In this document: one piece after another, positions 10,104-30,577 of the stretch
Numbering within the stretch: the stretch's first letter is position 1
Layout of the letters: every line of letters starts with the position of its first letter
Virus record (IMG/VR): IMGVR_UViG_3300037042_006844
Coordinates: 1 to 64,000 of that record
Reading direction: 5' to 3' (one strand)
Length of the DNA: 64,000 bases
The notes under the pieces: generated by a model
Told to the model about the DNA's origin: nothing
The model's database searches: none
Seen by the model: the letters and a program-made list of their open reading frames with translations, nothing else
Made by a program: the position numbers and the translations under genes

Positions 10104-11117
10104 TTATACAGTTTTCAGAAACTCGTCGGTATCCCTGCGCAGTTCATCTTCTGGAACACTGTCAATTTTGTCTCCGTATTTTTGAGTCCAGAACAACTTG
10201 ATTTTACCAAGCATTGGTCCTGGCTTAATTTGGGGAAAGTTCTTCATGATCCAATCGCCCCCATATTGGCTTTTGGCTGGAGCGAAGGCTTCTATTTCAG
10301 CCTGCTTTTTCACCATGTCGGCGTATTTGTCTGGAAATTGTGTTTTGATGTAATGATCGGCATCGGGCTGAGTTCTATGCTTTTTGAGAGCTATTAACTT
10401 GGCTTTTATCTCTTGAGCAGTTGGGCGACCCGCACGCATACGTTTGCGGTCACTGTTGTTCAAACCAACGCCTTCAAAATAGCTACTGTCGAAAAGATCG
10501 GTATAGCTGATAAAGTTAACGATGTCGTCGATAGTTTTGATATCATCGAATTTGCCCAAAATTGGGGTATACCCCAGCATTTTGAGTCCGTCCCTAAGAT
10601 TTTTGGTCAAAAGGATATAGTGATACTGCCCCTTTTTATCTTCATAGATTTTGAAGAATCCATCGGTGCCATACTTGAAATGTAATCTGCGAGAAAACAC
10701 GCCCAAAATACCACTAAAATCGTTATAACTCAAATAGTCGTATTGGGCATCATAATCGTCCGCACCAGCATACAAAAAGTCTACGTGAACGGTTTTGCCA
10801 GGAGCTGACTCGCTGCTATACAACACACTATAGATATTGCCATTTTTACTGTAGTCTTTGATCAGCGGTCCCAAGTAAGTAAATAATGCATTTTTGACGT
10901 TCGGATTTCCGCTGACAACGATATCGATATCGCCATGATCGGCTTTGGCGGGCAGTGCTTTGCTCAACTTAAACTTGTCAAACCTATCACCAAGCCTATG
11001 TTTCAGTTCATCGAAAATAGTGTTCATCTCGGTGGTAGATACCCGTTGAGCACGACTCCCAAACAGCTTTCCACCCTCTTTTATCAGCCCCGTTAATATG
11101 TTGCCCAGTTTAATCAT
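10104..11117 (-). CDS. Pol-beta-superfamily nucleotidyltransferase-like protein (likely start MIKLGN at 11117)
   Basis: KADHGDIDIVV (DxD) and VHVDF (third acidic residue); C-terminal IKPGPMLGKI resembles the tail of CCA/polyA-type enzymes. Confidence 0.6.
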   Translation of the reverse strand: MIKLGNILTGLIKEGGKLFGSRAQRVSTTEMNTIFDELKHRLGDRFDKFKLSKALPAKADHGDIDIVVSGNPNVKNALFTYLGPLIKDYSKNGNIYSVLYSSESAPGKTVHVDFLYAGADDYDAQYDYLSYNDFSGILGVFSRRLHFKYGTDGFFKIYEDKKGQYHYILLTKNLRDGLKMLGYTPILGKFDDIKTIDDIVNFISYTDLFDSSYFEGVGLNNSDRKRMRAGRPTAQEIKAKLIALKKHRTQPDADHYIKTQFPDKYADMVKKQAEIEAFAPAKSQYGGDWIMKNFPQIKPGPMLGKIKLFWTQKYGDKIDSVPEDELRRDTDEFLKTV

Positions 11118-11511
11118 ACTGGTTCTTTCATAAAGAATTTCCAAAATTCAACATCCACCGTTTTGATATCGGGATCGATATGTTGAGCAGTTTCGATGAT
11201 AATTTTGCTTTGTGGGCATCTATCATGCAGCTTCACATACACCGAATTATTATCAAACTTATATTGAAATATATATATGGATAAATTCTACATTCCATCG
11301 GTCTTCTGTCATATATTCCACATCTGTCATTGACCAAAAACTTGCAATTCCCGTCGACTCCCCTTTTTATTCTATAAATCACACCATTTTTTGTGTCCAA
11401 ATCATCCACATCAAATTTCGATATTTCATGTGGCAATAAAATGGGAGCGTTCACATCCACGTTCTTTCCACAACATTTTTCTGTGCAAATTCCACAATTC
11501 AGCGTTATCAT
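11114..11511 (-). pseudogene. YkgJ-like (Fe-S/Zn cysteine-cluster) gene interrupted by a 2-nt frameshift in an (AT)5 run
   Basis: CxxCxxxCC...CxFL...CxIYxxRPxECRxYP signature. Removing one AT at 11269-11278 gives a 131-aa ORF with a DRCP motif that ends at an ATGA overlap with the next gene. Confidence 0.7.
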
Positions 11512-11576
11512 AGGTTTCCAACTCCGCCCTATAACATAAATAGGTTTTGGCTATAAAAAAACGATATTTATAATGT

Positions 11577-12530
11577 ATGAAGAAGTCATTTACAACTCTG
11601 GTTCTACTATTGTTTTTGTCTGGATGCGGCACAATCATTCCCGATAACCAAAATGGTAGTCAAAAAAAGATCGCCAACAAAACTGAAGCGGTCACTGATG
11701 CCAAAAGCAAAATTGCCGCAAACACCGAAGAAAAATTGATACAAGTATCAGGACTAAGCTACGGAGTTGGCTACAGTCTCGATCACGTTCCGTTGACCAA
11801 CAAGATCAATGAAATTGAAACAGCCAAAGAGTTGAACAGCAGAATCGTCAGCATTGCTGGTTCTCCAGATTTGGATGAAATGAACCGAATCAAACAAACT
11901 GTAGACCTTTTGAACAGCGAAGTCAAGAAAGAAAGGGACAAAGGAGCCAAACTTTTGACAGACAAAGATCAGGAGATCATGATTGTTCAAAAAGAAAAAG
12001 AAGCCCTTAAAGCCAACTTGGAACGTAAAGTTGAAGACTTGACCAAGGCTGCAAAGAAGCAAGCCGAAGAATCTGATAGCAACAAAGTGGTGATTGAAAA
12101 CGTCAATAAATGGTTTGGATTGGGTGCCGTTTTCTATGGTCTCAAACGATTTGTCACTACTTGTATTGTGGGCATTTTGGTGTTTGGTGTTGCATTTTTG
12201 GTGCTGCGCCTTCTTGCCGCAACAAATCCAATCGCCGCAAGCATTTTCTCGGTGTTCAACATCATTGGTGCTGGAGTGATTCACACGGTGCGTGGTATAG
12301 CACCAAAAGCATTGAATTTTAGTGGGTTTTCATCCACAAACGAAGTTCAAAAATACAAAAACACTTTGGCTAAATTGGTGGACAACATTGAAGAAGTTCA
12401 GATTAAAAACACTGCCCCAGATGCAACCATCTCACTAAAAGATTTGCTTGATCATTTTGACAAAGAATTGGATCAAGCTGATAAAGATGTGATTACAGAA
12501 CTCAAAACTGAATTGCGATGGAAAAAATAA
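11577..12530 (+). CDS. Lipoprotein with coiled coil and C-proximal transmembrane helices (spanin-like or membrane protein)
   Basis: MKK + hydrophobic core + LSG|C lipobox; K/E-rich coiled coil; hydrophobic CIVGILVFGVAFLVLRLL and IAASIFSVFNIIGAGVI segments; TATTTATA 4 nt upstream. Confidence 0.7.
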   Translation: MKKSFTTLVLLLFLSGCGTIIPDNQNGSQKKIANKTEAVTDAKSKIAANTEEKLIQVSGLSYGVGYSLDHVPLTNKINEIETAKELNSRIVSIAGSPDLDEMNRIKQTVDLLNSEVKKERDKGAKLLTDKDQEIMIVQKEKEALKANLERKVEDLTKAAKKQAEESDSNKVVIENVNKWFGLGAVFYGLKRFVTTCIVGILVFGVAFLVLRLLAATNPIAASIFSVFNIIGAGVIHTVRGIAPKALNFSGFSSTNEVQKYKNTLAKLVDNIEEVQIKNTAPDATISLKDLLDHFDKELDQADKDVITELKTELRWKK

Positions 12531-12535
12531 AAAGA

Positions 12536-12564
12536 TTGACGTTCACACAACTCTGTGCTAATAT
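12536..12564 (+). promoter_or_regulatory. sigma70-type promoter (extended -10) of the Mom-like gene
   Basis: TTGACG (12536-41), 17-nt spacer, TGc-TAATAT (12559-64); ATG follows 6 nt later. Confidence 0.7.
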
Positions 12565-12570
12565 AAAAAC

Positions 12571-13344
12571 ATGGCAGAGTCCTATTGCGACACATCACTA
12601 ATTTATTTGGAGCCAATCAGCAAACCGATTGCCCGCAGCATGATCGAAAAAAACCACTATAGTCACAAGTGGTCTTGCTGCACCGTGGCTTACGGGGTTT
12701 TCTACAAAGAATACATCGAAAGCACATTTTTCGGTGGTTATCAGAGTAAACTAATCGGAGTATTGGTTTATGGAAATGCAGTGGGAAGATGCGCCAGCAA
12801 AAGCATCAGTCCTCTATTAGCCAACGATAATGTATTTGAACTCACCCGCTTGTGGGTCGCAGATGGCTATGGAAAAAACATAGAAAGTTATTGTATAGCT
12901 GAAAGCTTTCGGTTGTTAAACAAAGAATATCCCAAAATCAAATGCATATTGACCTATGCTGATAGCGAAGAAGGTCATCGTGGCATCATCTATCAAGCAT
13001 CTGGATTTATTTATCAAGGGGACAATTACGTCGATATTGCAATTATGCCGAACTACAGTGTAAGTTTGGACGGTCCTCCGAGCTACAAATGGATTCATAG
13101 TCGCAGTGTGTATAACCGATGGAAATCACACAATGTTGACAAGCTGAAAGAACGAATCGGCAAAACGTTTTGGCGCAAACGTGAAAGCGGAAAGCATCGC
13201 TATGTCAAATTCATTTGTGGCAAAATTGAAAACAAACGACTCAGAAAATCTTTGAAACACAAAGAATTGCCGTATCCAAAAGGTGCGATTTTCAAAGAAG
13301 TTGTCACTGAACACGTTGTGGACAGTTCACAGTCTTTCTTCTAA
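12571..13344 (+). CDS. Mom-like (GNAT-fold) DNA adenine modification protein
   Basis: KNHYSH, LIGVLVYG, FELTRLW, ILTYADSEEGHRGIIYQASGF, and K.RY motifs characteristic of phage Mom-like proteins. Confidence 0.8.
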   Translation: MAESYCDTSLIYLEPISKPIARSMIEKNHYSHKWSCCTVAYGVFYKEYIESTFFGGYQSKLIGVLVYGNAVGRCASKSISPLLANDNVFELTRLWVADGYGKNIESYCIAESFRLLNKEYPKIKCILTYADSEEGHRGIIYQASGFIYQGDNYVDIAIMPNYSVSLDGPPSYKWIHSRSVYNRWKSHNVDKLKERIGKTFWRKRESGKHRYVKFICGKIENKRLRKSLKHKELPYPKGAIFKEVVTEHVVDSSQSFF

Positions 13345-13350
13345 AACCGT

Positions 13351-13728
13351 TTAATTTTTGTAAAACTTCAATGTTTTTACCACTTTATCCAGACCCAAAT
13401 TTTTGAAGTTCAAATCGTCTTTCTTTTTACCCTGAAAGCTTTCGTGGTGGATGCTTACATCAAACCTTTTCATATCTTTGTCAAGAGGAATCACTGTAGC
13501 AGAATAATATGACACGGTGTTACTGTTTGGCAATACCAGAAACATTCCGAATCCTTTATCATATTTTTTAGTCCACGCATCTTTTCCAGACTCGAAATAT
13601 TTTGTCTCAGACACGTTGACCCCTCTTACATCATCTTGTGATCGGCGCAGTTTGGAAATTATTGTTTGAATAAGAGTGGGTTCATCGATCACTTCTTTGA
13701 TCAGTTGTATCAATTCTGTTTTTGTCAT
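13351..13728 (-). CDS. Hypothetical protein
   Basis: 125-aa ORF with the late box 5 nt upstream; N-terminus ELIQLIKE. Confidence 0.6.
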   Translation of the reverse strand: MTKTELIQLIKEVIDEPTLIQTIISKLRRSQDDVRGVNVSETKYFESGKDAWTKKYDKGFGMFLVLPNSNTVSYYSATVIPLDKDMKRFDVSIHHESFQGKKKDDLNFKNLGLDKVVKTLKFYKN

Positions 13729-13742
13729 ATATTAATAAATAG

Positions 13743-13764
13743 AAAAACCCCAGCTGGGGTTTTT
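13743..13764. terminator. Perfect 22-bp palindrome (terminator-like), a near copy of the capsid terminator
   Basis: AAAAACCCCAGCTGGGGTTTTT read directly. Confidence 0.7.
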
Positions 13765-13779
13765 TCGTCATGTAGTTGA

Positions 13780-15768
13780 TTAAATTTCAACAATGGCCTC
13801 TCGTTTATTTGCAGAATTTTTATCAAAATGACTTGTGTTTGATACTATATACGAGTTTATATTGGTCCAATTCAGCCGTTCGCTTAATTCGCTGGACACA
13901 TTAATGTAACATTTCTTACCCGAATATTTTTCAATTGCGGCGATGAACGTATTTTTCCAATCATTAAACGATCCGTGCGCAGTGCTGTTGCTGTAAATCT
14001 CAAGATCGTAATACGGAATGCTAGTAAAAATCAAATCAAACCGACGATCTGTTGAAAACTCCTCAAATTTACAATTGTGAATTTCTACATTGGTTAAATT
14101 TGCATTTTTAATAAAAGTCTGCAATTCACCGAATGTTTCAACGTTTGGTTCACATCCGATATACGTGCCATTTGGATATTTACTCTTAAATCCCAATAAT
14201 CTGCCGCCAAATCCACAACACGGGTCCAATACCACAGGCGAGGCCGTGTCCCCCAAATATTTGTGATATATTGCGGCTGCTAATAGCGGCTTAAAAAATG
14301 AAACGGTTATTCTTCTGGCAGACAAACCCTGTATCAATTGGTGTAAACTAAAATCAAATATTTCGCCACTATTATTACAACCGATTCTGTATTTTATAAC
14401 ATCGTGCATGATAGATTCGTCCTCCCACGCAGTTTTCGGCGCAACGTTACCTTTATAACTCGCTCCCCAGTAAGAATGGAAATGATGCTTCAAATAATTA
14501 TTGCCGATTGAATAAATATTGTTTGAAAATTCATTGGATTGCGCATTGTAAATCGATGTATAATCATATTCTCTAATTTTGCGCATAACCAATTCTATGC
14601 TCTCATATAACGGGGGATATGGAAATTCCGGTTGGAAATTGCGAATGAATTTTTTAAGCAACCACAAAAATGACTCAACGTAAGGTTGACCTTTGTCGAT
14701 AATGCAATTTGAAAAATATTCTTTATTTATTACCACATCGTCATATCCTAATACCAAATGGTTAATTTTATTATAACATGCTATATTTTTGATCAAATCG
14801 GTCTCACTGCGCGAGTTCGTTATGAGTGCAGACAAATCACTTTCGCGAATTCTATAAATATTATCGATGGTATTATTTTTTTGGCGATCCGATATAACAC
14901 TAGATAGCAGCTTAAAATTCAAATTTTCAATATTTGTTGGATGCCAATATTCGCCATCGATTTCAATGCACATATTGTGATCCTGTAAATAAAAATCAAC
15001 AGACGCGGACCTATCACCACAATCAACTACGTATGGATGTTTATATTTAATATTAAGAGAATTTAATAATGATTCAAAACATAGTTCTGGTTCTGTATCA
15101 ATAGTATTTATGGCACATTTTCTATTAACTGCACTATCCGACATTTTTTTGACAGCAGTTCGTTTATGCGTTTTACCATACATCGGATTATTGATTCCTA
15201 TTGAATTGTGCCCGGTAATATAATCGATTCTATATGGGTAGTAGTTTAACAACTTAACCGTTTTACCACACCCACATTCACACAGTGGGTGTGTATTATT
15301 AAATATGTGTTGTTTGACATAGGTCGGTTTGTCCAATTTGTGTATTTTTTTAATGTGCCAGCCCAGCAAATTACCGGAAGCAAATTGTTCTCCACAGATC
15401 ACACACGAATGTTTATTTTCTGTAGACATTAACCTATTTTTATATTCAATATTTTTAAGTTTGGATGAGCGATATTCACCACAGCGAATAACATAATCAT
15501 CTGGCGATATGCTATGTGTGTCCCTCAGATGAACAAAAAATCCAACCGAAGAATACTTGTTATTGCACAATTTACACTCAATTTTATTGACAGACCTAAT
15601 ATGCGTTTTACTTTTTTGTTTTCTAAACTCGCCGTATTTACATGCGTATTTATCGGATGTCAGTGCATGTTTCCATTTCAAATGACTTGAAAAGCTGTAT
15701 AATGAAATTTTTTCGCCGCAAATATCACAAGATTTCAACGACGGTTTATTAACAATAGCGCGACTCAT
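13780..15768 (-). CDS. Zn-finger/NUMOD3/DUF559-like endonuclease fused to a C-terminal SAM-dependent DNA amino-methyltransferase (likely start MSRAIV at 15768)
   Basis: Three CxxC..H..H fingers, CECGCG, GINNPMYGKTH (NUMOD3-like), TEPE...VDFY...IEIDGEYWH nuclease core, VLDPCCGFGGRLLG (motif I), GCEPN, DLIFTSIPYYDLEIY (motif IV-like). Confidence 0.8.
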   Translation of the reverse strand: MSRAIVNKPSLKSCDICGEKISLYSFSSHLKWKHALTSDKYACKYGEFRKQKSKTHIRSVNKIECKLCNNKYSSVGFFVHLRDTHSISPDDYVIRCGEYRSSKLKNIEYKNRLMSTENKHSCVICGEQFASGNLLGWHIKKIHKLDKPTYVKQHIFNNTHPLCECGCGKTVKLLNYYPYRIDYITGHNSIGINNPMYGKTHKRTAVKKMSDSAVNRKCAINTIDTEPELCFESLLNSLNIKYKHPYVVDCGDRSASVDFYLQDHNMCIEIDGEYWHPTNIENLNFKLLSSVISDRQKNNTIDNIYRIRESDLSALITNSRSETDLIKNIACYNKINHLVLGYDDVVINKEYFSNCIIDKGQPYVESFLWLLKKFIRNFQPEFPYPPLYESIELVMRKIREYDYTSIYNAQSNEFSNNIYSIGNNYLKHHFHSYWGASYKGNVAPKTAWEDESIMHDVIKYRIGCNNSGEIFDFSLHQLIQGLSARRITVSFFKPLLAAAIYHKYLGDTASPVVLDPCCGFGGRLLGFKSKYPNGTYIGCEPNVETFGELQTFIKNANLTNVEIHNCKFEEFSTDRRFDLIFTSIPYYDLEIYSNSTAHGSFNDWKNTFIAAIEKYSGKKCYINVSSELSERLNWTNINSYIVSNTSHFDKNSANKREAIVEI

Positions 15769-15775
15769 GTGTATA

Positions 15776-15804
15776 ACTATACACGATACGCTAAGAAAAT
15801 GCAA
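15776..15804 (-). promoter_or_regulatory. sigma70-like promoter of the endonuclease-methyltransferase gene
   Basis: TTGCAT (15804-15799), 17-nt spacer, TATAGT (15781-15776); ATG follows 7 nt later. Confidence 0.6.
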
Positions 15805-15831
15805 TGTTTTTTGCGTATCCTTTCACTATAC

Positions 15832-15869
15832 AAAAAAAAAAGAAAACCCCAGCGAAAGCTGGGGTTTTC
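15832..15869 (-). terminator. Rho-independent terminator after the major capsid gene
   Basis: Perfect 12-bp stem (15842-53 with 15858-69), 4-nt loop, T10 tract on the minus strand. Confidence 0.9.
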
Positions 15870-15894
15870 GTGTTATTCTAATTCGCTAGATCAA

Positions 15895-17634
15895 TTATAC
15901 TTGATCAAGGTCGGCAACCAGAACTTTTCCATAAAATTCGGGTCTGACTACCTTCTTAGCGTAGCGGGTCATCACACCACGGCGTGGCGTGAAATTCACT
16001 GGATCATAGACCAGTGGAGTTTGGATAAGCGGAATGTATGGGGCATACACTGCGCCGGTTTCGAGGAAGTTATTTCCACGGAAACCAATCAAGATGACGT
16101 TATCGGTCATATATGGGTTCTTGTAGACTTGGAAGCGACTTGCGAAGCTACCAACTCGGGCAACGCCCATTGCGAACTTGGCTTGATCACCATCGGTGTT
16201 GACCACATATCCTGGGATACTTTCTAGAATAGTTGCCACATCTGGAGAACAAACGAGGAAGTTAGCACCACCACGGAGAGTCAATTTGTGGATCGTGTTG
16301 GATACCTTTTGAATCTTGTTGCCAAGAGTCTGGAACCAAGTTGATTTCACATATGCTGTGCGGTTAGCGGCTGTGTTCTGATTACGTGTGAATGAAGCAA
16401 CGTTGGTCGTTGCGTTCACAGTCTTGGTGAACTCAGTTCCGATTGCAGCACTCCATGCTTCGGTGGTGACACCGGTCACGGATTCGTTTAACATGTCGAG
16501 GATTTCGAGGTCGATTTCCATTGACACATATTCGCTCAACAGTGCAGTAAGTTCTGCTTCTGCATCGATGCTGTGGTAAGCATTCAAATCTTGAGCAAGT
16601 TCTGGAGTCCAGATTGCTTTCAATTTGCGGGTCTTAGCCACGATAGGTTCGCTCTTGAGGTCAAGGTTGACTTCAGGAATACCAAGGTCAGTTCCAATTG
16701 CTTGGGTTGCGGTTGCGGCAGCTTTACCAGAACCTTCACCGGCAGTTTTACCATCTTCGAAATCACCACGCAAATTGTCCGTGGGTTGAATTGTATAAAT
16801 CAATCTTGGAGTTGCTGCCGGGTATATTGTGGCAGATGATTGGCTGACGAACATGTTAATTTGATAGTATGGGTTTGCCAAGCTACCAGTATTAACTGCT
16901 GTTGCATAAGTGTTCAACACAGTGTATGCTGTGTTGTTTGCTTGTGTAAGGCCGAATGAACGAACTGCGTTCAAATCAACATTCCAAAGATATCCGTTTG
17001 CAGCAACGGTTCCAGTTTGGGTGTTGTCATCAAGATTCAATGTTACCTTGAAAATACCTTTAACTTTACTAGTAGATGCAACAACTGATGAGCTAAATGC
17101 GGTATCAAATTGGAGATCGTTCCAACTTGCAGATGCAATTGTAGCTGATGTGCATGTAGAACTGGTCACAAATCTCTCTGAGTATGCATAACGACCTTGA
17201 CCGTAAAGACCGTTAACTGCTGAGTCGGTTGAACCGAGCTTCTTTTGAGTTCCACCGAACAAGCTTTCGCCGCTGGTGTGACCCAATTGGTTGTTGCCAT
17301 ACTTGAAGTCCAAGTAGAAAATCAGACCGCTTGGGAGATTCATCGGTTGAACACTGACGAATTCTTTAGCAGCGATTTCTGCGAACACACGGCGAACGAG
17401 TGGGAGAGCTACGCCAGCCCATTGTTCACTGTTTGCGCTTGTTCCGGTTGAGGTTGCTTCGTCAAGCAATTGTTTTGCTTGATTTTCCAAGAGGATCGAC
17501 ATGTGCGCCTTTTCGGTGCCACGGGTGCCTTCGAGAAGACCCGTTCGTTCCCACTTGGTTTGTAGACCACGGGTTTCAGCCATCAGCTTCGCCTGTGGAT
17601 TCATGTTTCCTGTCAATAGACTTTTTACATCCAT
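15895..17634 (-). CDS. gp23: Major capsid protein (gp23-like)
   Basis: LPLVRR, VQPMNLPSGLIFYL, AKTRKLKAIWTPELAQDLNAYHSIDAEAEL, YAPYIPL, GVMTRYA hallmark motifs. Confidence 0.97.
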   Translation of the reverse strand: MDVKSLLTGNMNPQAKLMAETRGLQTKWERTGLLEGTRGTEKAHMSILLENQAKQLLDEATSTGTSANSEQWAGVALPLVRRVFAEIAAKEFVSVQPMNLPSGLIFYLDFKYGNNQLGHTSGESLFGGTQKKLGSTDSAVNGLYGQGRYAYSERFVTSSTCTSATIASASWNDLQFDTAFSSSVVASTSKVKGIFKVTLNLDDNTQTGTVAANGYLWNVDLNAVRSFGLTQANNTAYTVLNTYATAVNTGSLANPYYQINMFVSQSSATIYPAATPRLIYTIQPTDNLRGDFEDGKTAGEGSGKAAATATQAIGTDLGIPEVNLDLKSEPIVAKTRKLKAIWTPELAQDLNAYHSIDAEAELTALLSEYVSMEIDLEILDMLNESVTGVTTEAWSAAIGTEFTKTVNATTNVASFTRNQNTAANRTAYVKSTWFQTLGNKIQKVSNTIHKLTLRGGANFLVCSPDVATILESIPGYVVNTDGDQAKFAMGVARVGSFASRFQVYKNPYMTDNVILIGFRGNNFLETGAVYAPYIPLIQTPLVYDPVNFTPRRGVMTRYAKKVVRPEFYGKVLVADLDQV

Positions 17635-17683
17635 AATATTATTTTCCTATCTTTTTGTTGGTTTGTTTTTACTCGCAAACAAT

Positions 17684-18811
17684 TTACTTCGTGATTCCTG
17701 CGAGCAATTGGAATCTTGAAGCCATCGCATCGGCTTGAGTTGCCACAATCATGGACTCAGGTCTGGTGGATGATACTGGTTTGCTTGCCAAACCTTCGGT
17801 GATAGTTGTTACGGTCGCATTAGATTTCTTTTTCGCAACCGATCCACCGGCATTATTTGATTCGGCTAAAACTGTATAAGCAAGCTTGATTTCACGCAAT
17901 GTTTTGGTGAGATCAAACGTGTTGATGACCCTCAACTTTTGAGCTTCGGTCAAATTCTTGTTTTTGAAAAGCTTGTTGGTATAAAGCAATTTTGCGTTGA
18001 GCAAATTGCTTTCTTCCAAAACGGTCTTAACATACTTGAGACCTTCATTGGCTTCAGAAAGACGTGCTTTCAATACTTCGTTCTCTTCGTTCAGAGCAAT
18101 CAATGCTTCAACCATTTCCTCATTGCTGATATCGCAATCTTCGGTTGGTGAAGGAACTTGTCCAGCTGCTGGAGCCGCTGGAGCCGCTGGGGCAACTGGG
18201 AGTCCAGTGTTAGGATCAATTTGCCCTGCTGCTGGAACTGGCGGCACAACTGGTGCTGGTGCTGCTCCTGGAACGCCATCTTCTTCAAGCTCGGCGAGAA
18301 GTTCGTCGAGGCTAAACTCTTCATCAGCGGGAACGTCGTCGAGGCTAAACTCTTCATCAGCGGGAACGTCGTCGTCGGATACTACAGGTTCGTCGCCCAT
18401 TTGTGCGCCACAACCGTCATCACCACATTCAGTGGTTGGGGTTTCGAGTTCGGCGAGAATCTCGTCAAGCTCTTCACTGGTGATTTCCATGCTCTCTTCC
18501 ATAGTTGCATCAAACTCTTGTTTGCCTGCTGGAGTGCTGTTTTTTGTTGCTGAAGCGGATGGTTTCACAGGATGTTGTTTTGAAGCAACGTTGCCTTTTT
18601 CGCCACCGATTTTTGAAGTAGAAAGTTTTTCTTCAATTTTCTCTCCGTCATCAGCATCTTGCTGCTCTTCTGAATCTTCCTTGAGTTTTTCTGCGAACAT
18701 GTTTTTCATGCTCTTTGCGAAATTTTCCTCAAGAAAAGTTTTTGCGTTCGCAATTGCAGTTTCACGAACTGCTTTTGCGTCGGCGATGCTCTCTTTTAAT
18801 AGATCGCTCAT
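17684..18811 (-). CDS. gp22: Prohead core scaffold protein (gp22-like)
   Basis: Acidic coiled-coil protein immediately upstream of the capsid gene; LLNAKLLY motif. Confidence 0.8.
   Translation of the reverse strand: MSDLLKESIADAKAVRETAIANAKTFLEENFAKSMKNMFAEKLKEDSEEQQDADDGEKIEEKLSTSKIGGEKGNVASKQHPVKPSASATKNSTPAGKQEFDATMEESMEITSEELDEILAELETPTTECGDDGCGAQMGDEPVVSDDDVPADEEFSLDDVPADEEFSLDELLAELEEDGVPGAAPAPVVPPVPAAGQIDPNTGLPVAPAAPAAPAAGQVPSPTEDCDISNEEMVEALIALNEENEVLKARLSEANEGLKYVKTVLEESNLLNAKLLYTNKLFKNKNLTEAQKLRVINTFDLTKTLREIKLAYTVLAESNNAGGSVAKKKSNATVTTITEGLASKPVSSTRPESMIVATQADAMASRFQLLAGITK
18303..18374. repeat. Perfect 33-nt tandem duplication inside the scaffold gene (DDVPADEEFSL x2)
   Basis: Unit tcgtcgaggctaaactcttcatcagcgggaacg starts at 18303 and 18336. 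Confidence 0.95.
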
Positions 18812-18960
18812 AATATAGTGTCCTTTTCTAGTTTTGTTGTGAAGTTATTGAAGAACTCCAAAGAAGATTTATCTGCACTGACATCAAAGACATTGATGTA
18901 TTTGATAATAAATATCGTATAAAAAAGGAAAATCGCAAAAATCTTTCTATTTATAGATAT

Positions 18961-19870: not shown

Positions 19871-19888
19871 CGCCCCACTATATAAAGC

Positions 19889-19914
19889 AAAAAACCGCCG
19901 AATGGCGGTTTTTT
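19889..19914. terminator. Bidirectional terminator between convergent genes
   Basis: AAAAAACCGCC-gaat-GGCGGTTTTTT. Confidence 0.9.
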
Positions 19915-19933
19915 CGTTTGTCGATCCAATGAT

Positions 19934-20404
19934 TTACTTTGGAGAATTTTGCGGCTTTTGATTGCTTTGTGGCTGTTGCGGTTGAGCAACTTGTGAGGTT
20001 GGTTGTGCCAGACCTTGTTGCATTTCAACTGGGTCAGCGATTTCAAAATAACGTTCCAACTTCAAACCAATTTCTTCATACAGCATTTCGAGTTGTTGTT
20101 CAACACCTTTGATTTTGTGTGCTTCTTCATACAACTTTGAAGCCATTTTCTTGACTTCTTTCATATCCCGCTCCACCATTTTTGCTTCCATCCACTCACG
20201 GCATTCTTTGAGTGCATAACGTTCGGCTAAATTGACGGCATCCATGATTTTGTTTGCAGTCTCGTAAACACACTCTGCCTTCAAGTTTTTGCGATATTCG
20301 TTGTAAGCCTTGATGGTTTCACGAAGTCTGACTTTCTCCTCTTTTGACAAAGGAGCATATGCTGTCTCGGTTGCATTTTCTACTAGATGTTTTAACTTGA
20401 TCAT
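19934..20404 (-). CDS. Head-module coiled-coil protein
   Basis: 156 aa, MIKLKHLVE leader, late box 4 nt upstream, adjacent to the protease gene. Confidence 0.65.
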   Translation of the reverse strand: MIKLKHLVENATETAYAPLSKEEKVRLRETIKAYNEYRKNLKAECVYETANKIMDAVNLAERYALKECREWMEAKMVERDMKEVKKMASKLYEEAHKIKGVEQQLEMLYEEIGLKLERYFEIADPVEMQQGLAQPTSQVAQPQQPQSNQKPQNSPK

Positions 20405-20425
20405 ATGCTATAAATAGGGTATAAA

Positions 20426-21028
20426 TTATAATTCCGAGATGATATCGTGAATGATTCTTTCAATATCACCATAAGGATTGACAATTTGATTTGGATTGAC
20501 ACTCTCGGCGAGTTTGTTCTGCGGATACATGAATGCACCTTGTGTGCTTGGATTGCTAACGAAATCAAATGCAATTAAATCAAAATCGTCTTGCACGACA
20601 TCGGCTCCCTCACGCATATCCTTTTTAACACTACCCAAACCACGGCTGCTGATTCCCAGCAAAATGCCTGCTTTGAGCAAATCTTTAAGAATGTTGCCGC
20701 TTGGTGTGGGAAGAATTTCAACTGTCCCAACCAAATCATCGCCGTCCCAACCCATATCCACAATATTGTGGCTAACGTTTTTTAGGTTAACAACGCTGCT
20801 TTCTGGATGATCCAGTTCGCCCATTGCCCTACGTTGTTTCACAAAGTTATCCAAATATTTTGCAGCTTCACGCTCTAAAATACCTTTTGGGTAAACTCTA
20901 CCGTTTTGGTTTTTTGCATCGGCACGTTGTAGTGTGCCTGTGACAAGCATTTTGCCATCGGTCAAAGATTCGTTCAACGAAGACCTTTTGAACTCAAATG
21001 GTAATACATCAATTAATACTGTTTTCAT
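20426..21028 (-). CDS. gp21: Prohead protease (gp21-like)
   Basis: KNQNGRVYP, GELDHP, VSH, GISSRGLGS and DFVSNPS motifs. Confidence 0.95.
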   Translation of the reverse strand: MKTVLIDVLPFEFKRSSLNESLTDGKMLVTGTLQRADAKNQNGRVYPKGILEREAAKYLDNFVKQRRAMGELDHPESSVVNLKNVSHNIVDMGWDGDDLVGTVEILPTPSGNILKDLLKAGILLGISSRGLGSVKKDMREGADVVQDDFDLIAFDFVSNPSTQGAFMYPQNKLAESVNPNQIVNPYGDIERIIHDIISEL

Positions 21029-21031
21029 GTG

Positions 21032-22099
21032 TTAAGCTGTTGGTGGCGGTTGAGTTCCAGTTTTATCTGCTGGTTTTTCTTCGCCGACTGGAGCCGCTGG
21101 TTCTTTGCTCGTCACTGTATTGTTGGGACTCGACGAAGACTGTTTGGCTGGATCGACCAATGCTTGCGATTTGGCGATTTGATATCGATCTTTTGGTTTT
21201 GTTTCAGCGGGACCAAGAATTTTGACCTTGAATCCTGGCTTGATAAAGAACTTTGCGGTCTTTTGTTTACTTTCCTCGCGCCCGAGAATGATGATCACAT
21301 AGCGATCATAATAATAATCGATGTTCACGCCAGTCACGTTAATTGTATAATCAGTCTCAGGCTGTTTGAAACCTTTGCTCGCACGGACCACAATTTTTTT
21401 ATTGAGAATTTGATCCTGAATCTTTTTTTGCAGATTCGTTTTCAACTCTTCAGTGCTATCTTTCAGCTTGGTGTCAAACTGAGTAAAATCTGGTTGGAGG
21501 TTATATGCTTGCACTTGCACGTTTGGTGCAGCGGGTTGTTGCTGCTGCGGTTGTGCAGTTTGCGCTGGTGCTTGCGGAGCCGCCGGTTGTTGAGCGGGAA
21601 CTTCACCCGCTTCGGTTCGTAAACGATATCGTAAACCGTTGATCCCTTCAACTACTTTGATGCCCTTTTTGTAAAAATGATTCTCTGTAAACGGCAAGCG
21701 ACCTTGTTTATATCCGTCAAGACCAGGATCCATTTCTGGATCGCCATGTTGAGGAAGCCCGTTTTTATCAGCCCAAACATCGACTGGTTCAATATTTTGT
21801 GCTGGAGTCACATAAGCTGGCTCACTATACATTTGGTTTTCCAATGACAAATCGGTATTCCGATTCACCGGTTTTGCGAGCTTATATCCAAGCTGTGTAG
21901 CTGCTTTAACGTTTCCGGGACCACGGCGGCTAAATGCAAACGGTGACATCACACCGCCAACTGCACTGCTGGTAGTAGCTTCATCTATCCCATTAATTGC
22001 AGCATCAATACGCTCTTTAAGGTCAGGAGCAATATTCTCAGCATTGACCTCCAAATAGCGTTGCAGCTTTGCTTTTTTTAACTCAGTTTTCATTGGCAA
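21032..22099 (-). CDS. Hypothetical head-module protein
   Basis: 355-aa ORF coupled to its neighbours; EATTSSAVGG..PFAF segment; P/A/Q linker. Confidence 0.65.
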   Translation of the reverse strand: MPMKTELKKAKLQRYLEVNAENIAPDLKERIDAAINGIDEATTSSAVGGVMSPFAFSRRGPGNVKAATQLGYKLAKPVNRNTDLSLENQMYSEPAYVTPAQNIEPVDVWADKNGLPQHGDPEMDPGLDGYKQGRLPFTENHFYKKGIKVVEGINGLRYRLRTEAGEVPAQQPAAPQAPAQTAQPQQQQPAAPNVQVQAYNLQPDFTQFDTKLKDSTEELKTNLQKKIQDQILNKKIVVRASKGFKQPETDYTINVTGVNIDYYYDRYVIIILGREESKQKTAKFFIKPGFKVKILGPAETKPKDRYQIAKSQALVDPAKQSSSSPNNTVTSKEPAAPVGEEKPADKTGTQPPPTA

Positions 22100-22949: not shown

Positions 22950-23003
22950 ATAGTTCTATTAAATATAAATATGTATCACTTTACAAAATCATCGCGAATT
23001 GTG

Positions 23004-26804: not shown

Positions 26805-26828
26805 AATGTGCTATCTTATATATAAGTA

Positions 26829-28037
26829 TTATAACAACCAAGTTAGTGACTCTTTTTTGCCAGTATGCGCTGCGCCGGTGTCGAATTTCCAAGTTTCTTG
26901 AGGAGATTGGATGATTTTGGTCTGACTTGCGGGTCCTGGAGTAGTGTTTACCACCTTTTTAATGCCACTCAGCATGGTGCGTGTGTATAGCATTTGCTCG
27001 GTTCGTATTTTTAATGCGGTGTCTCGCACCCAAAGACCAATACCCAACGACATCACAAGATCGTCGTTATAGCCTTTCATTGCTTCAGCTTTAGCACCGT
27101 TCCAAATAAACACATTAAGCTCTTCGTAAAGACGGACACTACGAATTACAATTTGTTGTTCACGGAAAAACGCCTCCATTTTGTTGATAATGAGTTGGCG
27201 GTTGATGTTTGTCGTTGTGAATCCGGGAACTGCTTTTTTCTCAGTATTATTGAGTTTATTGCTATAAGTTCGCTCTATATCGACAACTTTTAGATCAGAT
27301 GAACTGTAAAAAAGATTTTGGTATTCTCTGTCTATAATTTGCTGCAACGATGCCCAACCAATGTTATTGTTTTCAACGACCAACAAAGCATTGTTATATT
27401 CAGTTGCCACTGTTACCAACAAATTTCCAAAATCTTTGGTTGTAATCTGCCCTTTATATTCCGCAACTTGCTCCAAAGTTTCAACGTCAAATACATGAAA
27501 CGCGCTAAAATCCGCTCCGTCGCCGCGAGCGCAGTCGGCAGATATCATATAGTTTTTGCTGTAATCAGGACGTTCCCATATCCACAAATCCTGTGTGGCA
27601 CCACGTTTTTCAATGGGGTCTTTGATATAAGTTTTTTTGTAAAACTCCAAGACATCGACTGAGACGACTTGATTTCCAGATGTGCTGAAATCACAATTAT
27701 GCGATACAATTCCATCTACATTGAATATATTGCCGTTGCCGACATTTACAATATCATATAAATCGATTGCGGCATCGACTTTCGTAATGGATATAACTTC
27801 GATATCCGCGCCATCAACTCCTGTTATTTTTGAGCCAATTTTTATATCGCACGAACGAATTTCTATTGAATTAAAAATAAAAGGATGATTATCAGAACAC
27901 TTTATCGTCTTGCCATTACTCAAAAATATGACATAATGACAATCTTTTTTTAGCTTTCTAATACCCAAAAAATTTTGATATCCAGAAGGAGTGAGAATCT
28001 GGAATCTTGTGTTAAGCTTAACGTCAGGGATGTTCAT
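26829..28037 (-). CDS. gp17: Terminase large subunit C-terminal (nuclease) half with an N-terminal split-intein C-fragment
   Basis: IntC ending IVSHN followed by CDFSTSG; ISADCARGDGADFS, VVENNNIG, YNDDLVMS RNase-H-like terminase motifs. Confidence 0.92.
   Translation of the reverse strand: MNIPDVKLNTRFQILTPSGYQNFLGIRKLKKDCHYVIFLSNGKTIKCSDNHPFIFNSIEIRSCDIKIGSKITGVDGADIEVISITKVDAAIDLYDIVNVGNGNIFNVDGIVSHNCDFSTSGNQVVSVDVLEFYKKTYIKDPIEKRGATQDLWIWERPDYSKNYMISADCARGDGADFSAFHVFDVETLEQVAEYKGQITTKDFGNLLVTVATEYNNALLVVENNNIGWASLQQIIDREYQNLFYSSSDLKVVDIERTYSNKLNNTEKKAVPGFTTTNINRQLIINKMEAFFREQQIVIRSVRLYEELNVFIWNGAKAEAMKGYNDDLVMSLGIGLWVRDTALKIRTEQMLYTRTMLSGIKKVVNTTPGPASQTKIIQSPQETWKFDTGAAHTGKKESLTWLL
27696..28037 (-). 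mobile_element. Split intein C-fragment (114 aa)
   Basis: MNIPDVKLNTRFQILTPSG...CSDNHPF (block B)...LYDIVN (block F)...VSHN (block G). Confidence 0.88.
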
Positions 28038-28048
28038 AATGTATATGA

Positions 28049-28882
28049 TCAAATTAGATGAGAATATAAATTTTCTAATGAAATCTCATATTCGATACCA
28101 GTATTTTTATCTAGTATTTTAACTGTCGAATCCCCCCATAGACAATCGCATTCTTGAGCCGCCCCTTTTATGCCAGACAATTCGGTCTGTTGATCGCGCC
28201 ATGTTTGATCACGATCTGGATGCAAATTCCAAGGCAGACGAATGGTATTGAACTTGTTTTCACCGGCTTCGGCTGCCACCCACGTTTTATGGAAAAAATT
28301 ACCAACACCGTTTGGCGTTGATAATATGATCGCACGACCGCCGGTTGAAAGAGTGTATTGTGATGACAGCCAAATTTCTTCGATGTTGTCAATAAACGCG
28401 GCTTCGTCAATAATCAGCACAGAGAGTGCTGCTGAACGACCTGCGGTTCCCGCACTGGAAACAGCTTTGATTTGCGACCCGTTTTTGAGACGCAAGCTCA
28501 AACGGTTATCTTCCACGCACTGAACTTTCAACCACGCCGGAAGATTGTCATTTGCGAAACGAACTTTTGTGACAATTTCTTTGGCAGTTTCCTGAGTAAT
28601 GCTGATGATTAGAATATTTTTGTCGGTAAAAAACGTCATCAACCACAAACTATATGCTGCCGTTAGAGTGGAAATACCCATCTGACGACTTTTGAGAATG
28701 ATGTTGAGACTGTTTTCTACCAAATCTGTAAGAGCCTCTTCCTGAAATGGATACAAATCAAAATTACAGGTGCCGCGCACTGGATGTTGGATTTTCACAT
28801 ACTTCTTCATGAAGTATATGGGGTCTTCCAAACATCGTTTATACTCGGCTTTTATTAGCTCTCTGTAATTTTGCTGACTCAT
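28049..28882 (-). CDS. gp17: Terminase large subunit N-terminal (ATPase) half ending in a short split-intein N-fragment
   Basis: LYPFQ, LKSRQMGIS (Walker A), LIIDEAAF (Walker B), STPNG; then QECD followed by CLWGDST. Confidence 0.93.
   Translation of the reverse strand: MSQQNYRELIKAEYKRCLEDPIYFMKKYVKIQHPVRGTCNFDLYPFQEEALTDLVENSLNIILKSRQMGISTLTAAYSLWLMTFFTDKNILIISITQETAKEIVTKVRFANDNLPAWLKVQCVEDNRLSLRLKNGSQIKAVSSAGTAGRSAALSVLIIDEAAFIDNIEEIWLSSQYTLSTGGRAIILSTPNGVGNFFHKTWVAAEAGENKFNTIRLPWNLHPDRDQTWRDQQTELSGIKGAAQECDCLWGDSTVKILDKNTGIEYEISLENLYSHLI
28052..28144 (-). mobile_element. Split intein N-fragment (31 aa)
   Basis: CLWGDSTVKILDKNTGIEYEISLENLYSHLI-stop; block A only. Confidence 0.88.
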
Positions 28883-29489
28883 AATTCCCTTCTAATTCCG
28901 CAATGAACCCGTCAAGTTCTGCCAACCGAGCATTGATAATGGCGAGGTCTCTAGAGACATCTTCCTGGATTTTGCCCAAATCCGCACTGGTTTCCCACTT
29001 TTCAATAGTGCCATCTTCGTTGATAAATTCCAATGGCTTTCCTGTATGATCAACGCACCATTTCAACGTCTCGTCAAATTTCTTTTTGTATTCGCCCAAA
29101 ACACTGCGCTCGTTGCGAAGATCGCGGGCTTTATCAAAAAAGTCCCACGTTCCTTCCAGCTTCATTTGCGTTTCATTTTTTATAAAACAATCGTAACAAA
29201 ACTGAGTTTTTGGCCAAACTCGATCATCAAGATAATTTCCCCATCGAACATCGCAATTACAACCTTTGCAACGTTTTTCGATAATGATCGATTTTTTTGG
29301 AACTCGGCGTTTTTTACCGTCTTTCAAAACCCACTTTTTTCCACTGCTATCCTCCCATTCTTCACCCTCTTTACGAGTTGAATCATTGAGACTTTCAGTA
29401 TAACCAATTTGTATAAACGGACGACTACCATCTATATAGTCTTTGACAATAGCAAGATTACTTTTACCTTGAGCTTTCTTCATAACCAA
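28839..29489 (-). CDS. Hypothetical protein upstream of terminase, with a CxxC..CxxC motif
   Basis: CKGC...CYDC; overlaps the terminase start. Confidence 0.65.
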   Translation of the reverse strand: MVMKKAQGKSNLAIVKDYIDGSRPFIQIGYTESLNDSTRKEGEEWEDSSGKKWVLKDGKKRRVPKKSIIIEKRCKGCNCDVRWGNYLDDRVWPKTQFCYDCFIKNETQMKLEGTWDFFDKARDLRNERSVLGEYKKKFDETLKWCVDHTGKPLEFINEDGTIEKWETSADLGKIQEDVSRDLAIINARLAELDGFIAELEGNYESAKLQRANKSRV

Positions 29490-29501
29490 TATGTATTTGT
29501 T

Positions 29502-30554
29502 TTATTTACCAAAACCACTTTGTAGACCTTTAATGATGAACCCCCCAGTTATTTTATATGGTTTGCTATGAATGCTTGGATCGCGCACCACAATGCCTTC
29601 ATGCTTCTCCAAATCCCCAATTTCACTGGTGGCATTTTTAAGGATTTCATCGCCCAATTTGACCGTTGCGATGTAAACGATTGTATCATTAATGATCTTT
29701 TTGATATCTTCACCTTGAAAATCGGCACTGATATTTTTGCTGTCTGAAGCTTTGACAAACTGCTCACGGGTAATCAATGGAGTTTGAATGCTAATACCTT
29801 TCAGCCAATCTTTGAGAGATTTGGTAACGGGATTGCCGTCTGGATATAACGTAACTTTTTCACCCAATGGTCTGGTTAGATTTGGATTGGATTTGAACGT
29901 TGTGCCAATGCTGCCCAAAACTTTGAATCCGTATTTTTTAGCGACCGCATTCAATTTGTTGATGTAACTTTGCATTGCATCGTGGTCATAGTTGATTTCG
30001 GTTGCCACACGGCTTTTTACTTGCCCATCCTTGCCAATATTTTTTGGTTTGATTTCTTTCAATCCGTGAATTGCCAGAAAATTTCCGATGTCGCCATACC
30101 CAACTACATTGGTTTGCCCTTCCACATATTCGATGTTCAACAAAATGTTAGGATTGTCGAGCATTCCCAATTTTTTCAATTCCGATTTGGTGCTGGGAAT
30201 TGCTGCGTCGAATATATTAAGCACTTTGGCACCAATTTTAACGAATCCGTGTTCTTGACCAGAGGCGGGATCAGTGGGCCAGCGTTTCGCCAAATCGTCG
30301 GGTCGCATTCCTTGAATATCGAACGGTTTGGCACTACCACGGTCCATAACGAATTGTCCTTTTGACAAACGAATACTGGCGTTTACACCGTCAATTTTGA
30401 CACTTCCTGCGCCTTTTTTAAGTGTTTCAATGGTTTTGACAAATACGTCCACCAATTGTTTTCCGTTGGCGGCAAAATCGAACGGGTGGTCCATATGCCC
30501 TCCCGCGCCGCCTTCGGTCAATACTTCATAGAGTAGATTATTTAACTTGATCAT
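29502..30554 (-). CDS. Ligase-like (covalent nucleotidyltransferase superfamily) protein
   Basis: VKIDGVN (motif I KxDG), LNIEYV (III), EGIVVR (IV), YKITG (V); N-terminal EGGAGGHMDHP. Confidence 0.6.
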   Translation of the reverse strand: MIKLNNLLYEVLTEGGAGGHMDHPFDFAANGKQLVDVFVKTIETLKKGAGSVKIDGVNASIRLSKGQFVMDRGSAKPFDIQGMRPDDLAKRWPTDPASGQEHGFVKIGAKVLNIFDAAIPSTKSELKKLGMLDNPNILLNIEYVEGQTNVVGYGDIGNFLAIHGLKEIKPKNIGKDGQVKSRVATEINYDHDAMQSYINKLNAVAKKYGFKVLGSIGTTFKSNPNLTRPLGEKVTLYPDGNPVTKSLKDWLKGISIQTPLITREQFVKASDSKNISADFQGEDIKKIINDTIVYIATVKLGDEILKNATSEIGDLEKHEGIVVRDPSIHSKPYKITGGFIIKGLQSGFGK

Positions 30555-30577
30555 TAACTATAAATATATGACGAAAC

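What the first reader, a model, noticed from the sequence alone, without database searches (positions are those of the whole stretch)
10104..30554. Shared MIKLxxL..E N-terminal leader on enzyme-like proteins suggests capsid targeting and co-injection
Seen: MIKLGNILTGLIKE-GG (NTase-like, 11117), MIKLKHLVE (20404) and MIKLNNLLYEVLTE-GG (ligase-like, 30554), plus a looser MTKTELIQLIKE (13728). Known: T4 internal proteins carry a ~10-aa capsid-targeting sequence ending in Glu that the gp21 protease removes. Inference: unrelated enzymes have acquired a common packaging tag, so this phage may inject nucleotidyltransferase or ligase activities with its DNA, for example to counter host tRNA/RNA-cleaving defences.
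Basis: inference. Interest (0 to 1): 0.62.

Follow-up and report, generated by a model that had tools for sequence, protein, structure and literature searches.

The report
Portable capsid-targeting-like leader on phage proteins
A 300-kb T4-related freshwater phage and its relatives put the same roughly 10-residue N-terminal peptide on at least a dozen unrelated proteins, which closely resembles the tag phage T4 uses to load proteins into its head for injection, though loading was not tested here.

Summary
Three proteins in the head-gene module start with MIKL: a Pol-X-like nucleotidyltransferase (10104-11117), a small coiled-coil protein just after the prohead protease (19934-20404), and an RNA-ligase-like protein (29502-30554). 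The fourth, looser case (13728) is not supported.

The phage is a "Far-T4" jumbo phage of 303.6 kb. It has T4-type portal, major capsid protein and Peptidase_S77 (gp21-type) protease.

In about 150 related metagenomic loci the leader is conserved at peptide level while synonymous codons vary freely. It has hydrophobic residues at positions 4, 7 and 8, and ends in [LIV]-x-Glu at position 9/10 or 14, which is the gp21 cleavage motif. It heads at least 12 unrelated families, including a CCA-adding enzyme, a J-domain protein and a lysozyme.

These genes form a variable array of 1-4 tagged genes between the sheath and terminase genes. One insertion is flanked by a 25-nt repeat of leader-coding DNA. 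AlphaFold leaves the leader as a detached, low-confidence helix. Distant homologues without a leader begin M-GG, exactly at the predicted cut.

Caveat: in the ligase family the helix-Glu-Gly-Gly junction is ancestral and also occurs inside fusion proteins.

Capsid loading, cleavage and injection remain inference. I rate this a new variant of the T4 capsid-targeting sequence, with new cargo.

The parts
29502..30554 (-). P0002, 350 aa. Leader residues 1-14 (MIKLNNLLYE, then VLTE, then GG) followed by an RNA-ligase-like covalent nucleotidyltransferase domain.
   Evidence: AF2 mean pLDDT 92, residues 1-14 below 50. Best structural match is T4 RNA ligase 1 (Z 9.2), followed by RNA/DNA ligases and capping enzymes. 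K53-x-D55-G56, E319-G320 and K334 are invariant. Orthologues keep the leader.
30513..30554 (-). Leader-coding segment of P0002 (codons 1-14). Predicted cuts after Glu10 and/or Glu14.
   Evidence: L-Y-E and L-T-E fit the L/I-x-E motif of gp21 (PMC9026906). Leaderless homologues start M-GG at the position after Glu14.
19934..20404 (-). P0003, 156 aa. Leader MIKLKHLVE, then a coiled-coil protein with a Gln/Pro-rich tail, immediately downstream of the prohead protease. Probable prohead core or scaffold component.
   Evidence: Position next to the protease. 112 orthologous ORFs were detected; 70 carry a full leader, M(I)KLKHL[VL]E then NSTE, and most of the rest begin MKL. No Pfam or PHROG family.
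10104..11117 (-). P0001, 337 aa. Leader residues 1-14 (MIKLGNILTGLIKE, then GG) followed by a Pol-X-like (Pol beta/lambda palm-thumb) nucleotidyltransferase and a helical C-terminal domain.
   Evidence: AF2 mean pLDDT 89, residues 1-15 below 50. Foldseek matches Pol beta/lambda/mu at E about 3e-6, prob 1.0. D63, D65 and D113 are invariant. phrog_24943. Orthologue leaders are 10-19 aa and always end E-GG.
20426..21028 (-). Prohead protease, gp21 type (Peptidase_S77). The enzyme proposed to remove the leader.
   Evidence: Pfam PF03420 at 7.5e-30. phrog_207. The catalytic His and Ser motifs align with RB14 gp21.
15895..17634 (-). Major capsid protein, gp23 type. Carries L-D-E then A at the position that aligns with the gp23 maturation site.
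   Evidence: Pfam PF07068 at 1.2e-73. Alignment with RB14 gp23 and gp24.
17684..18811 (-). 375-aa acidic protein placed like the gp22 scaffold. Its N-terminus, MSDLLKE, also ends L-x-E.
   Evidence: Gene order. Similar to the protein at the same position in Flavobacterium phage immuto.
23004..26804 (-). Portal protein, gp20 type, interrupted by intein(s). Part of the head module that frames the tagged genes.
   Evidence: PF07230 at 1.2e-65, plus Intein_splicing and LAGLIDADG_3.
21032..22093 (-). 353-aa protein between portal and protease. It has no leader here, but a homologue in a relative (L104) starts MIKLKSLLNE.
13351..13728 (-). P0004, 125 aa. Not supported as a leader protein.
   Evidence: Low matrix score. 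No relatives found. No family hit.

Best explanation
The MIKL-type peptide is a capsid-targeting propeptide of the T4 kind. It is a short amphipathic N-terminal helix: Met1, Ile2, Leu or Phe at 4, Leu or Ile at 7, Leu or Val at 8, and Glu at 9/10, sometimes extended by one more helical turn to a second Glu at 14.

Proposed mechanism (all inferred):
- The helix docks the protein to the scaffolding core while the prohead is built.
- The gp21-type protease encoded at 20426-21028 then cuts after the [LIV]-x-Glu.
- The mature proteins stay in the head with the DNA and enter the cell at infection.

In this genome the mature proteins would be a Pol-X-like nucleotidyltransferase and an RNA-ligase-like enzyme, both then starting Gly-Gly. 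In relatives the cargo also includes a CCA-adding enzyme, a J-domain protein, a lysozyme and small basic proteins. A core or scaffold protein (P0003) uses the same peptide.

New cargo genes appear to join the set by recombination within the leader-coding DNA.

Shown here: the leader is modular, selected at peptide level and coupled to the protease motif; the genes lie in the head module; the T4-type assembly genes are present.
For: 1. T4-type head machinery: Peptidase_S77, Gp23 and Portal_T4. The catalytic His and Ser motifs of the protease are kept, and the capsid protein has L-D-E then A aligned with the gp23 cleavage site.

2. Published T4 rules. gp21 cuts after L/I-x-E. The first 10 residues of IPIII suffice for targeting. 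Residues 4 and 7 matter for targeting, 8 and 10 for processing (PMC9026906). The T4 tag is MKTYQEFIAE (PMC8442874). The leader here has the same length and the same hydrophobic/Glu pattern. It shares 6 of 10 residues with the RB14 gp24 N-terminus read from L163.

3. Modularity. 218 of 2,605 ORFs in 157 related loci carry the leader, in at least 12 unrelated families. These include PolyA_pol+HD CCA-adding enzyme and Phage_lysozyme and DnaJ.

4. Coupling to the cleavage motif. Among N-termini with the hydrophobic pattern, 65 of 78 have [LIV]-x-E ending at positions 8-10, against 46 of 565 other ORFs.

5. Peptide-level selection. Ile2 uses three codons and Leu4 uses six.

6. A variable array of 1-4 tagged genes lies between sheath and terminase. 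The J-domain gene insertion is flanked by an identical 25-nt leader repeat, and the flank is shared with genomes that lack the gene.

7. AF2 leaves residues 1-14/15 as an unpacked helix with pLDDT below 50 in both enzymes.

8. Leaderless homologues begin M-GG at the predicted mature end: P0001 relatives in three other large phages and many P0002 relatives.

9. Synteny is kept at 40% identity on a 239.5-kb contig, with a 10-residue leader ending L-L-E.

10. Most tagged proteins are basic, pI 8.5-9.9.
Against: There are no virion proteomics, no cleavage data and no cultured isolate, so targeting, cutting and injection are all analogy.

In the P0002 family an amphipathic helix ending [LIV]-x-E-G-G precedes the domain even when it lies 200-900 residues inside multidomain proteins. 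That part of the 'leader' is therefore an old family feature and may have a structural or other role.

A few orthologues have Cys instead of Glu before GG.

L/I-x-E is a short motif that is common in helical, Glu-rich sequence.

Similarity to the T4 tag is in pattern only; 10 residues are too few to prove homology.

The interaction test between protease and leader could not be run.
Confidence: 0.6

Rival explanations
1. The helix is a functional part of the proteins, or a shared binding peptide for some partner other than the prohead (for example a chaperone, a membrane or an assembly factor). It is neither removed nor used for packaging.
For: The helix-E-GG junction is conserved inside fusion proteins of the P0002 family, where it cannot be an N-terminal tag. 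A J-domain protein is among the tagged set, which could hint at a chaperone-linked role.
Against: At least 12 unrelated folds carry it. AF2 does not pack it against either enzyme. Leaderless homologues start at GG. Leader length varies from 8 to 19 residues while its ends are kept. A core-like protein next to the protease and a homologue of the portal-protease spacer gene carry it. It is tightly coupled to the protease motif.
Confidence: 0.17
2. The conserved 5' sequence is mainly a DNA-level device. It acts as a recombination junction for swapping gene cassettes, or as part of the promoter and start region of leaderless mRNAs, and the shared peptide is a by-product.
For: A 25-nt direct repeat of leader DNA flanks the inserted J-domain gene. 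P0002 and P0003 share TATTTATAG, a short spacer and 14 identical coding bases. TATTTATA lies 3-6 nt before the ATG of many genes, suggesting leaderless transcripts. The leader is rich in residues encoded by A/U-rich codons.
Against: About 30 other genes have the same promoter-like motif with quite different N-termini. Codons for the conserved Ile2 and Leu4 vary freely, three and six codons respectively, while the residues stay fixed. P0001 in this genome uses different codons from P0002 for the same MIKL. The Glu at 9/10 and the [LIV] two residues before it are conserved at protein level. Recombination at the leader fits the targeting model and does not replace it.
Confidence: 0.12
3. Chance resemblance of a few N-termini.
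For: MIKL as a bare 4-mer is only mildly over-represented (P about 0.009), and MKKL is as frequent.
Against: Matrix scores are far above all controls. The leader is conserved in hundreds of orthologues and recurs on at least 12 families.
Confidence: 0.01

Closest known systems
[quoted passage not shown]
   Same: About 10 N-terminal residues, hydrophobic at positions 4, 7 and 8, with Glu at 10 in an L/I-x-E site. Shared by otherwise unrelated, mostly basic proteins. The phage has a gp21-type protease. The genes sit in variable loci.
   Different: Different sequence (MIKL... against MKTYQEFIAE). Often 9 or 14-19 residues, with two possible cut sites. Cargo here is enzymes of 200-480 aa rather than small anti-restriction proteins. 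Nothing has been tested experimentally.
T4 Alt (packaged ADP-ribosyltransferase) and the gp24, gp22 and gp21 N-terminal propeptides
   Same: Alt is an enzyme loaded into the head and injected after gp21 processing. The N-termini of RB14 gp24, gp22 and gp21 read in L163 end L/I-x-E at residue 9 or 10, like P0003 and the enzymes here.
   Different: The cargo activities differ: ligase-like, Pol-X-like, CCA-adding, J-domain and lysozyme. Here the same peptide is used by a core-like protein and by the cargo.
Ejection proteins of phiKZ and SPN3US giant phages, with protease-removed propeptides
   Same: Large phages with gp21-related proteases that cut many head proteins after Glu and inject a protein bolus (PMC9026906).
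   Different: Their motif is S/A-x-E, their propeptides are long and not a common short tag, and their capsid genes are not T4-type.
T4 RNA ligase 1 and other ATP-dependent RNA ligases (for P0002); family X polymerases (for P0001)
   Same: The nucleotidyltransferase fold and catalytic motifs are conserved.
   Different: No Pfam match. P0002 has a conserved Gly-rich, His-containing N-terminal motif not known from characterised ligases. P0001 matches only palm and thumb. Neither family is known to be packaged.

Membership tests
T4-type capsid targeting propeptide | Phage encodes a gp21-type (Peptidase_S77) prohead protease with catalytic His and Ser | tested here: met
   PF03420 at 7.5e-30. His and Ser motifs align with RB14 gp21.
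T4-type capsid targeting propeptide | Short N-terminal peptide ending in the L/I-x-Glu cleavage motif | tested here: met
   All three window proteins. 65 of 78 unique leader-type N-termini in relatives against 46 of 565 controls. Motif taken from PMC9026906.
T4-type capsid targeting propeptide | Hydrophobic residues at positions 4 and 7 (targeting) and 8, with Glu at 10 (processing) | tested here: met
   Position table: Leu/Phe at 4, Leu/Ile at 7, Leu/Val at 8, Glu at 9 or 10. The roles of these positions are from the IPIII genetics summarised in PMC9026906.
T4-type capsid targeting propeptide | Same peptide on otherwise unrelated proteins | tested here: met
   At least 12 families after removing the first 16 residues. 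Pfam identities.
T4-type capsid targeting propeptide | Peptide is sufficient to load a protein into proheads | not testable with these tools
   Needs a reporter fusion in an infected host.
T4-type capsid targeting propeptide | Proteins are found in virions with the peptide removed | not testable with these tools
   No proteome available.
T4-type capsid targeting propeptide | Sequence homology to the T4 tag | tested here: inconclusive
   Same pattern, and 6 of 10 identities with the RB14 gp24 N-terminus, but 10 residues are too short for a statistical test.
ATP-dependent ligase / capping-enzyme nucleotidyltransferase superfamily (P0002) | Motif I Lys-x-Asp-Gly, motif IV Glu-Gly and motif V Lys | tested here: met
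   K53, D55, G56, E319, G320 and K334 are invariant in 48 sequences.
ATP-dependent ligase / capping-enzyme nucleotidyltransferase superfamily (P0002) | Nucleotidyltransferase fold | tested here: met
   Z 9.2 to T4 Rnl1 over 190 residues at rmsd 4.0. The next roughly 30 rows are almost all ligases or capping enzymes. Foldseek is weak (E 2e-3) but gives the same families.
ATP-dependent ligase / capping-enzyme nucleotidyltransferase superfamily (P0002) | Match to a curated family model | tested here: not met
   No Pfam or PHROG hit. No PDB sequence hit.
Family X (Pol beta-like) nucleotidyltransferase (P0001) | Catalytic Asp triad on the palm | tested here: met
   G62, D63, D65 and D113 are invariant in 30 sequences.
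Family X (Pol beta-like) nucleotidyltransferase (P0001) | Palm-thumb fold | tested here: met
   Foldseek E about 3e-6, prob 1.0, about 170-200 aligned columns to Pol beta, lambda and mu.
Family X (Pol beta-like) nucleotidyltransferase (P0001) | Fingers and 8-kDa domains of a full Pol X | tested here: not met
   Only about 170-200 alignment columns of the 337-residue protein align, with TM-scores of 0.34-0.39 normalised to its length. The C-terminal half is a separate helical domain. No Pfam hit.

The most novel reading that the evidence does not exclude
Far-T4 jumbo phages pre-load their capsids with an RNA-repair kit (an RNA-ligase-like enzyme, a Pol-X-like nucleotidyltransferase and a CCA-adding enzyme), together with a J-domain co-chaperone and a lysozyme. 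They do so through one portable 10-residue tag, and they gain or swap cargo genes by recombination inside the tag-coding DNA. The enzymes would then act from the first second of infection, for instance against tRNA-cutting defences.
Probability: 0.3. Interest if true: 0.8.

Novelty: new variant of a known kind. Interest (0 to 1): 0.6.

Why it matters
If the tag works as in T4, protein delivery through a short capsid-targeting peptide is an old and widespread feature of the T4 superfamily, not a peculiarity of the T-even coliphages. The cargo would also be broader than thought: nucleic-acid repair enzymes, a co-chaperone and a wall-degrading enzyme.

It would point to a class of injected counter-defence enzymes in abundant, uncultured freshwater phages. 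It would give a simple sequence rule for listing candidate injected proteins from metagenomes. It would offer a second, independent tag for engineering protein delivery by phage heads.

The Gly-Gly start shared by processed and leaderless homologues also raises a testable question: whether a free N-terminus matters for these two enzyme families.

Tried and rejected
- Near-identical phage DNA: none in the phage collection. tblastn of P0002 found nothing.
- Pfam, PHROG and PDB sequence searches left P0002, P0003 and P0004 unnamed.
- Paralogy of P0001 and P0002 as the reason for the shared start: rejected. BLASTP aligns only residues 1-16 and the folds differ.
- Leaderless-mRNA constraint as the cause of MIKL: rejected. 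About 30 genes share the TATTTATA-N3-6-ATG arrangement with unrelated N-termini.
- P0004 as a fourth member: no relatives and a low matrix score.
- The 660-aa protein at genome position 287479-289461 (MKFKSIINDV, matrix score 12): no Glu site, no family hit, and it lies among non-head genes. Left as doubtful.
No verdict.
- A context look-up for one leaderless homologue returned no DNA.
- The literature gave no earlier description of this leader in Far-T4 phages.
- No reads tools were used.


Full report
**What is in the sequence.** The window is the first 64 kb of a single 303,564-bp contig with 41% G+C. Three minus-strand genes begin with MIKL:
- P0001 (10104-11117, 337 aa)
- P0003 (19934-20404, 156 aa)
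- P0002 (29502-30554, 350 aa)

P0004 (13351-13728) begins MTKTELIQLIKE. For P0001 the open frame continues 9 codons upstream. Conservation in orthologues starts at the ATG at 11117, which overlaps the stop of the preceding ORF.

BLASTP between P0001 and P0002 aligns only residues 1-16.

**Context.** The genes lie in a T4-type head module. Reading along the minus strand the order is:
- tail sheath (32258-36244)
- a homing endonuclease
- P0002
- a 214-aa protein
- large terminase, in two ORFs
- a gp20-type portal with inteins (23004-26804)
- two unnamed genes
- a Peptidase_S77 prohead protease (20426-21028; PF03420, 7.5e-30)
- P0003
- two plus-strand genes
- a 375-aa acidic scaffold-like protein
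- a gp23-type capsid protein (15895-17634; PF07068, 1e-73)
- further on, P0004 and then P0001
- a head-tail adaptor-like gene

The nearest cultured capsid proteins are those of Microcystis phage Mel-JY01 (51%), Flavobacterium phage immuto (59% over part) and Rhodothermus phage RM378. That places the phage in the "Far-T4" group (PMC4360716).

The protease keeps the His and Ser motifs of RB14 gp21. The capsid protein has L-D-E followed by Ala aligned with the gp23 maturation site.

**Is it more than chance?** The 4-mer alone is weak evidence: 0.42 expected, P about 0.009. I built a 10-position matrix from relatives' leaders only. It gives 18.5 and 18.4 for P0003 and P0002. The next real N-termini score 12.0 and 5.3, and none of 1,617 internal Met positions reaches 5. 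P0004 does not fit the matrix and has no relatives.

**Relatives.** IMG/VR holds many related contigs. Orthologues keep the leader:
- P0002: MI[KR]L, two variable residues, IL, one variable residue, E, three more residues, E, then GG.
- P0003: M(I)KLKHL[VL]E.
- P0001: most often exactly ten residues (MIKLMDLL[KV]E) before GG, but also 14, 16, 17 or 19.

Ile2 is written with three codons and Leu4 with six, so selection acts on the peptide.

A pattern for the hydrophobic positions finds 218 of 2,605 ORFs in 157 loci. After removing the first 16 residues these fall into at least 12 unrelated families. Named families are:
- a complete CCA-adding enzyme (PolyA_pol, RNA-binding, HD and tRNA_NucTran2_2 domains) and a phage lysozyme
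- a DnaJ J-domain protein

The rest are a 257-aa, a 96-aa and a basic 173-aa family, a homologue of the portal-protease spacer gene 21032-22093, and singletons.

Without demanding a Glu, 65 of 78 such N-termini have [LIV]-x-E ending at residue 8-10, against 46 of 565 other ORFs.

**Gene arrays and exchange.** Between the sheath gene and the 214-aa gene the relatives carry 1 to 4 consecutive tagged genes in varying combinations.

Where the J-domain gene is present, it and the following P0002 gene begin with the same 25 nucleotides. The J gene's upstream flank is the flank that directly precedes P0002 in genomes lacking it. This is what insertion by recombination within the leader-coding DNA would leave.

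In L057 an HNH-like ORF has captured the first 20 codons of P0002, and the P0002 gene behind it has a different N-terminus that is again leader-like.

**The two enzymes.**
- P0002 folds with mean pLDDT 92. Its best structural match is T4 RNA ligase 1 (Z 9.2, 190 residues, rmsd 4.0), followed almost only by RNA and DNA ligases and capping enzymes. The ligase motifs I, IV and V are invariant.
- P0001 folds with mean pLDDT 89 and matches the palm-thumb of Pol beta, lambda and mu (E about 3e-6, prob 1.0). Three Asp residues are invariant.

In both models residues 1-14/15 form a short helix with pLDDT below 50 that is not packed on the domain.

**Where the mature end would be.** Distant P0001 relatives in Xanthomonas phage BUDD, a Variovorax phage and an uncultured 636-kb phage start M-GG with no leader. 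Many P0002 relatives also start M-GG. A cut after the Glu would give the same Gly-Gly start.

A 40%-identical P0002 relative with a 10-residue leader ending L-L-E sits in the same sheath-terminase-portal-protease synteny on a 239.5-kb contig.

**Comparison with T4.**
- gp21 cuts after L/I-x-E (PMC9026906).
- The first ten residues of IPIII suffice for loading (same source).
- Residues 4 and 7 govern targeting; residues 8 and 10 govern processing (same source).
- The T4 tag is MKTYQEFIAE (PMC8442874).
- In RB14 the N-termini of gp24, gp22 and gp21 end L/I-x-E at residue 9 or 10.

The leader here has the same length and the same pattern, in a phage with the same protease family.

**Caveat.** In the P0002 family the domain is very often preceded by an amphipathic helix ending [LIV]-x-E-G-G, even when it lies hundreds of residues inside fusion proteins whose N-terminal part is an NMNAT-like nucleotidyltransferase. 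The distal half of the P0002 leader is therefore ancestral to the family. It may have another role, or those fusions may themselves be cut; I cannot tell which.

A promoter-like TATTTATA lies 3-6 nt before the ATG of P0002, P0003 and about 30 other genes with unrelated N-termini. The leaderless-type start therefore does not explain the peptide.

**Verdict.** The shared leader is real, modular and built like a T4 capsid-targeting propeptide. Loading, cleavage, injection and an anti-defence role are inferred, not shown.

Noticed in passing
window 20405-20417 and 30555-30567, and about 30 other sites genome-wide: The motif TATTTATA lies 3-6 nt upstream of the ATG of many genes on both strands, with no Shine-Dalgarno sequence. 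This suggests a phage promoter that gives leaderless or nearly leaderless mRNAs.
   Followed up: partly
window 23004-26804: The gp20-type portal gene is 1,266 codons long because of intein insertion(s), with Intein_splicing and LAGLIDADG_3 domains. A 40%-diverged relative (L164) also has an intein in its portal gene.
   Followed up: no
window 26829-28882: The large terminase is split into two adjacent ORFs: an ATPase part (28049-28882) and a nuclease part (26829-28037). The second ORF has about 118 extra N-terminal residues. Flavobacterium phage immuto has a single 524-aa gene.
   Followed up: no
window 12571-13344 (+), 13780-15768 (-) and 30635-32143 (-): A Mom-like DNA modification gene (phrog_1384, 2e-44) and two homing-endonuclease-like genes sit inside the head module. 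One of the endonuclease-like genes has weak Vsr, NUMOD3 and methyltransferase hits.
   Followed up: no
L057:9163-10017: In one relative an HNH-like ORF is fused in frame to the first 20 codons of the P0002 gene. The P0002 copy behind it has a replaced but still leader-like N-terminus, with Cys instead of Glu before GG.
   Followed up: partly
genome 300980-301774 (outside the window): A stand-alone NMNAT-like nucleotidyltransferase gene. In many other phages this domain is fused upstream of the P0002-like ligase domain, which suggests the two enzymes work together.
   Followed up: no
genome 76595-110554 and 166213-167800 (outside the window): ARAGORN finds 37 tRNA genes, including two with odd anticodon loops.
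   Followed up: no
genome 287479-289461 (L162:4480-6462): A 660-aa protein starts MKFKSIINDV behind the same TATTTATA-N4-ATG arrangement and scores 12 with the leader matrix. It lacks an L/I-x-E site near the start and has no family hit.
   Followed up: partly
window 15895-17634: The gp23-type capsid protein has an insertion relative to RB14 gp23, starting at roughly residue 130; its exact length was not measured.
   Followed up: no
L161 (Flavobacterium phage immuto, record positions 106896-148503): Several genes around the head module of this cultured relative start with a different short peptide (MKK...) that ends L/I-x-E, for example an 841-aa protein starting MKKLIRIVE. This may be a lineage-specific version of the same device.
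   Followed up: partly
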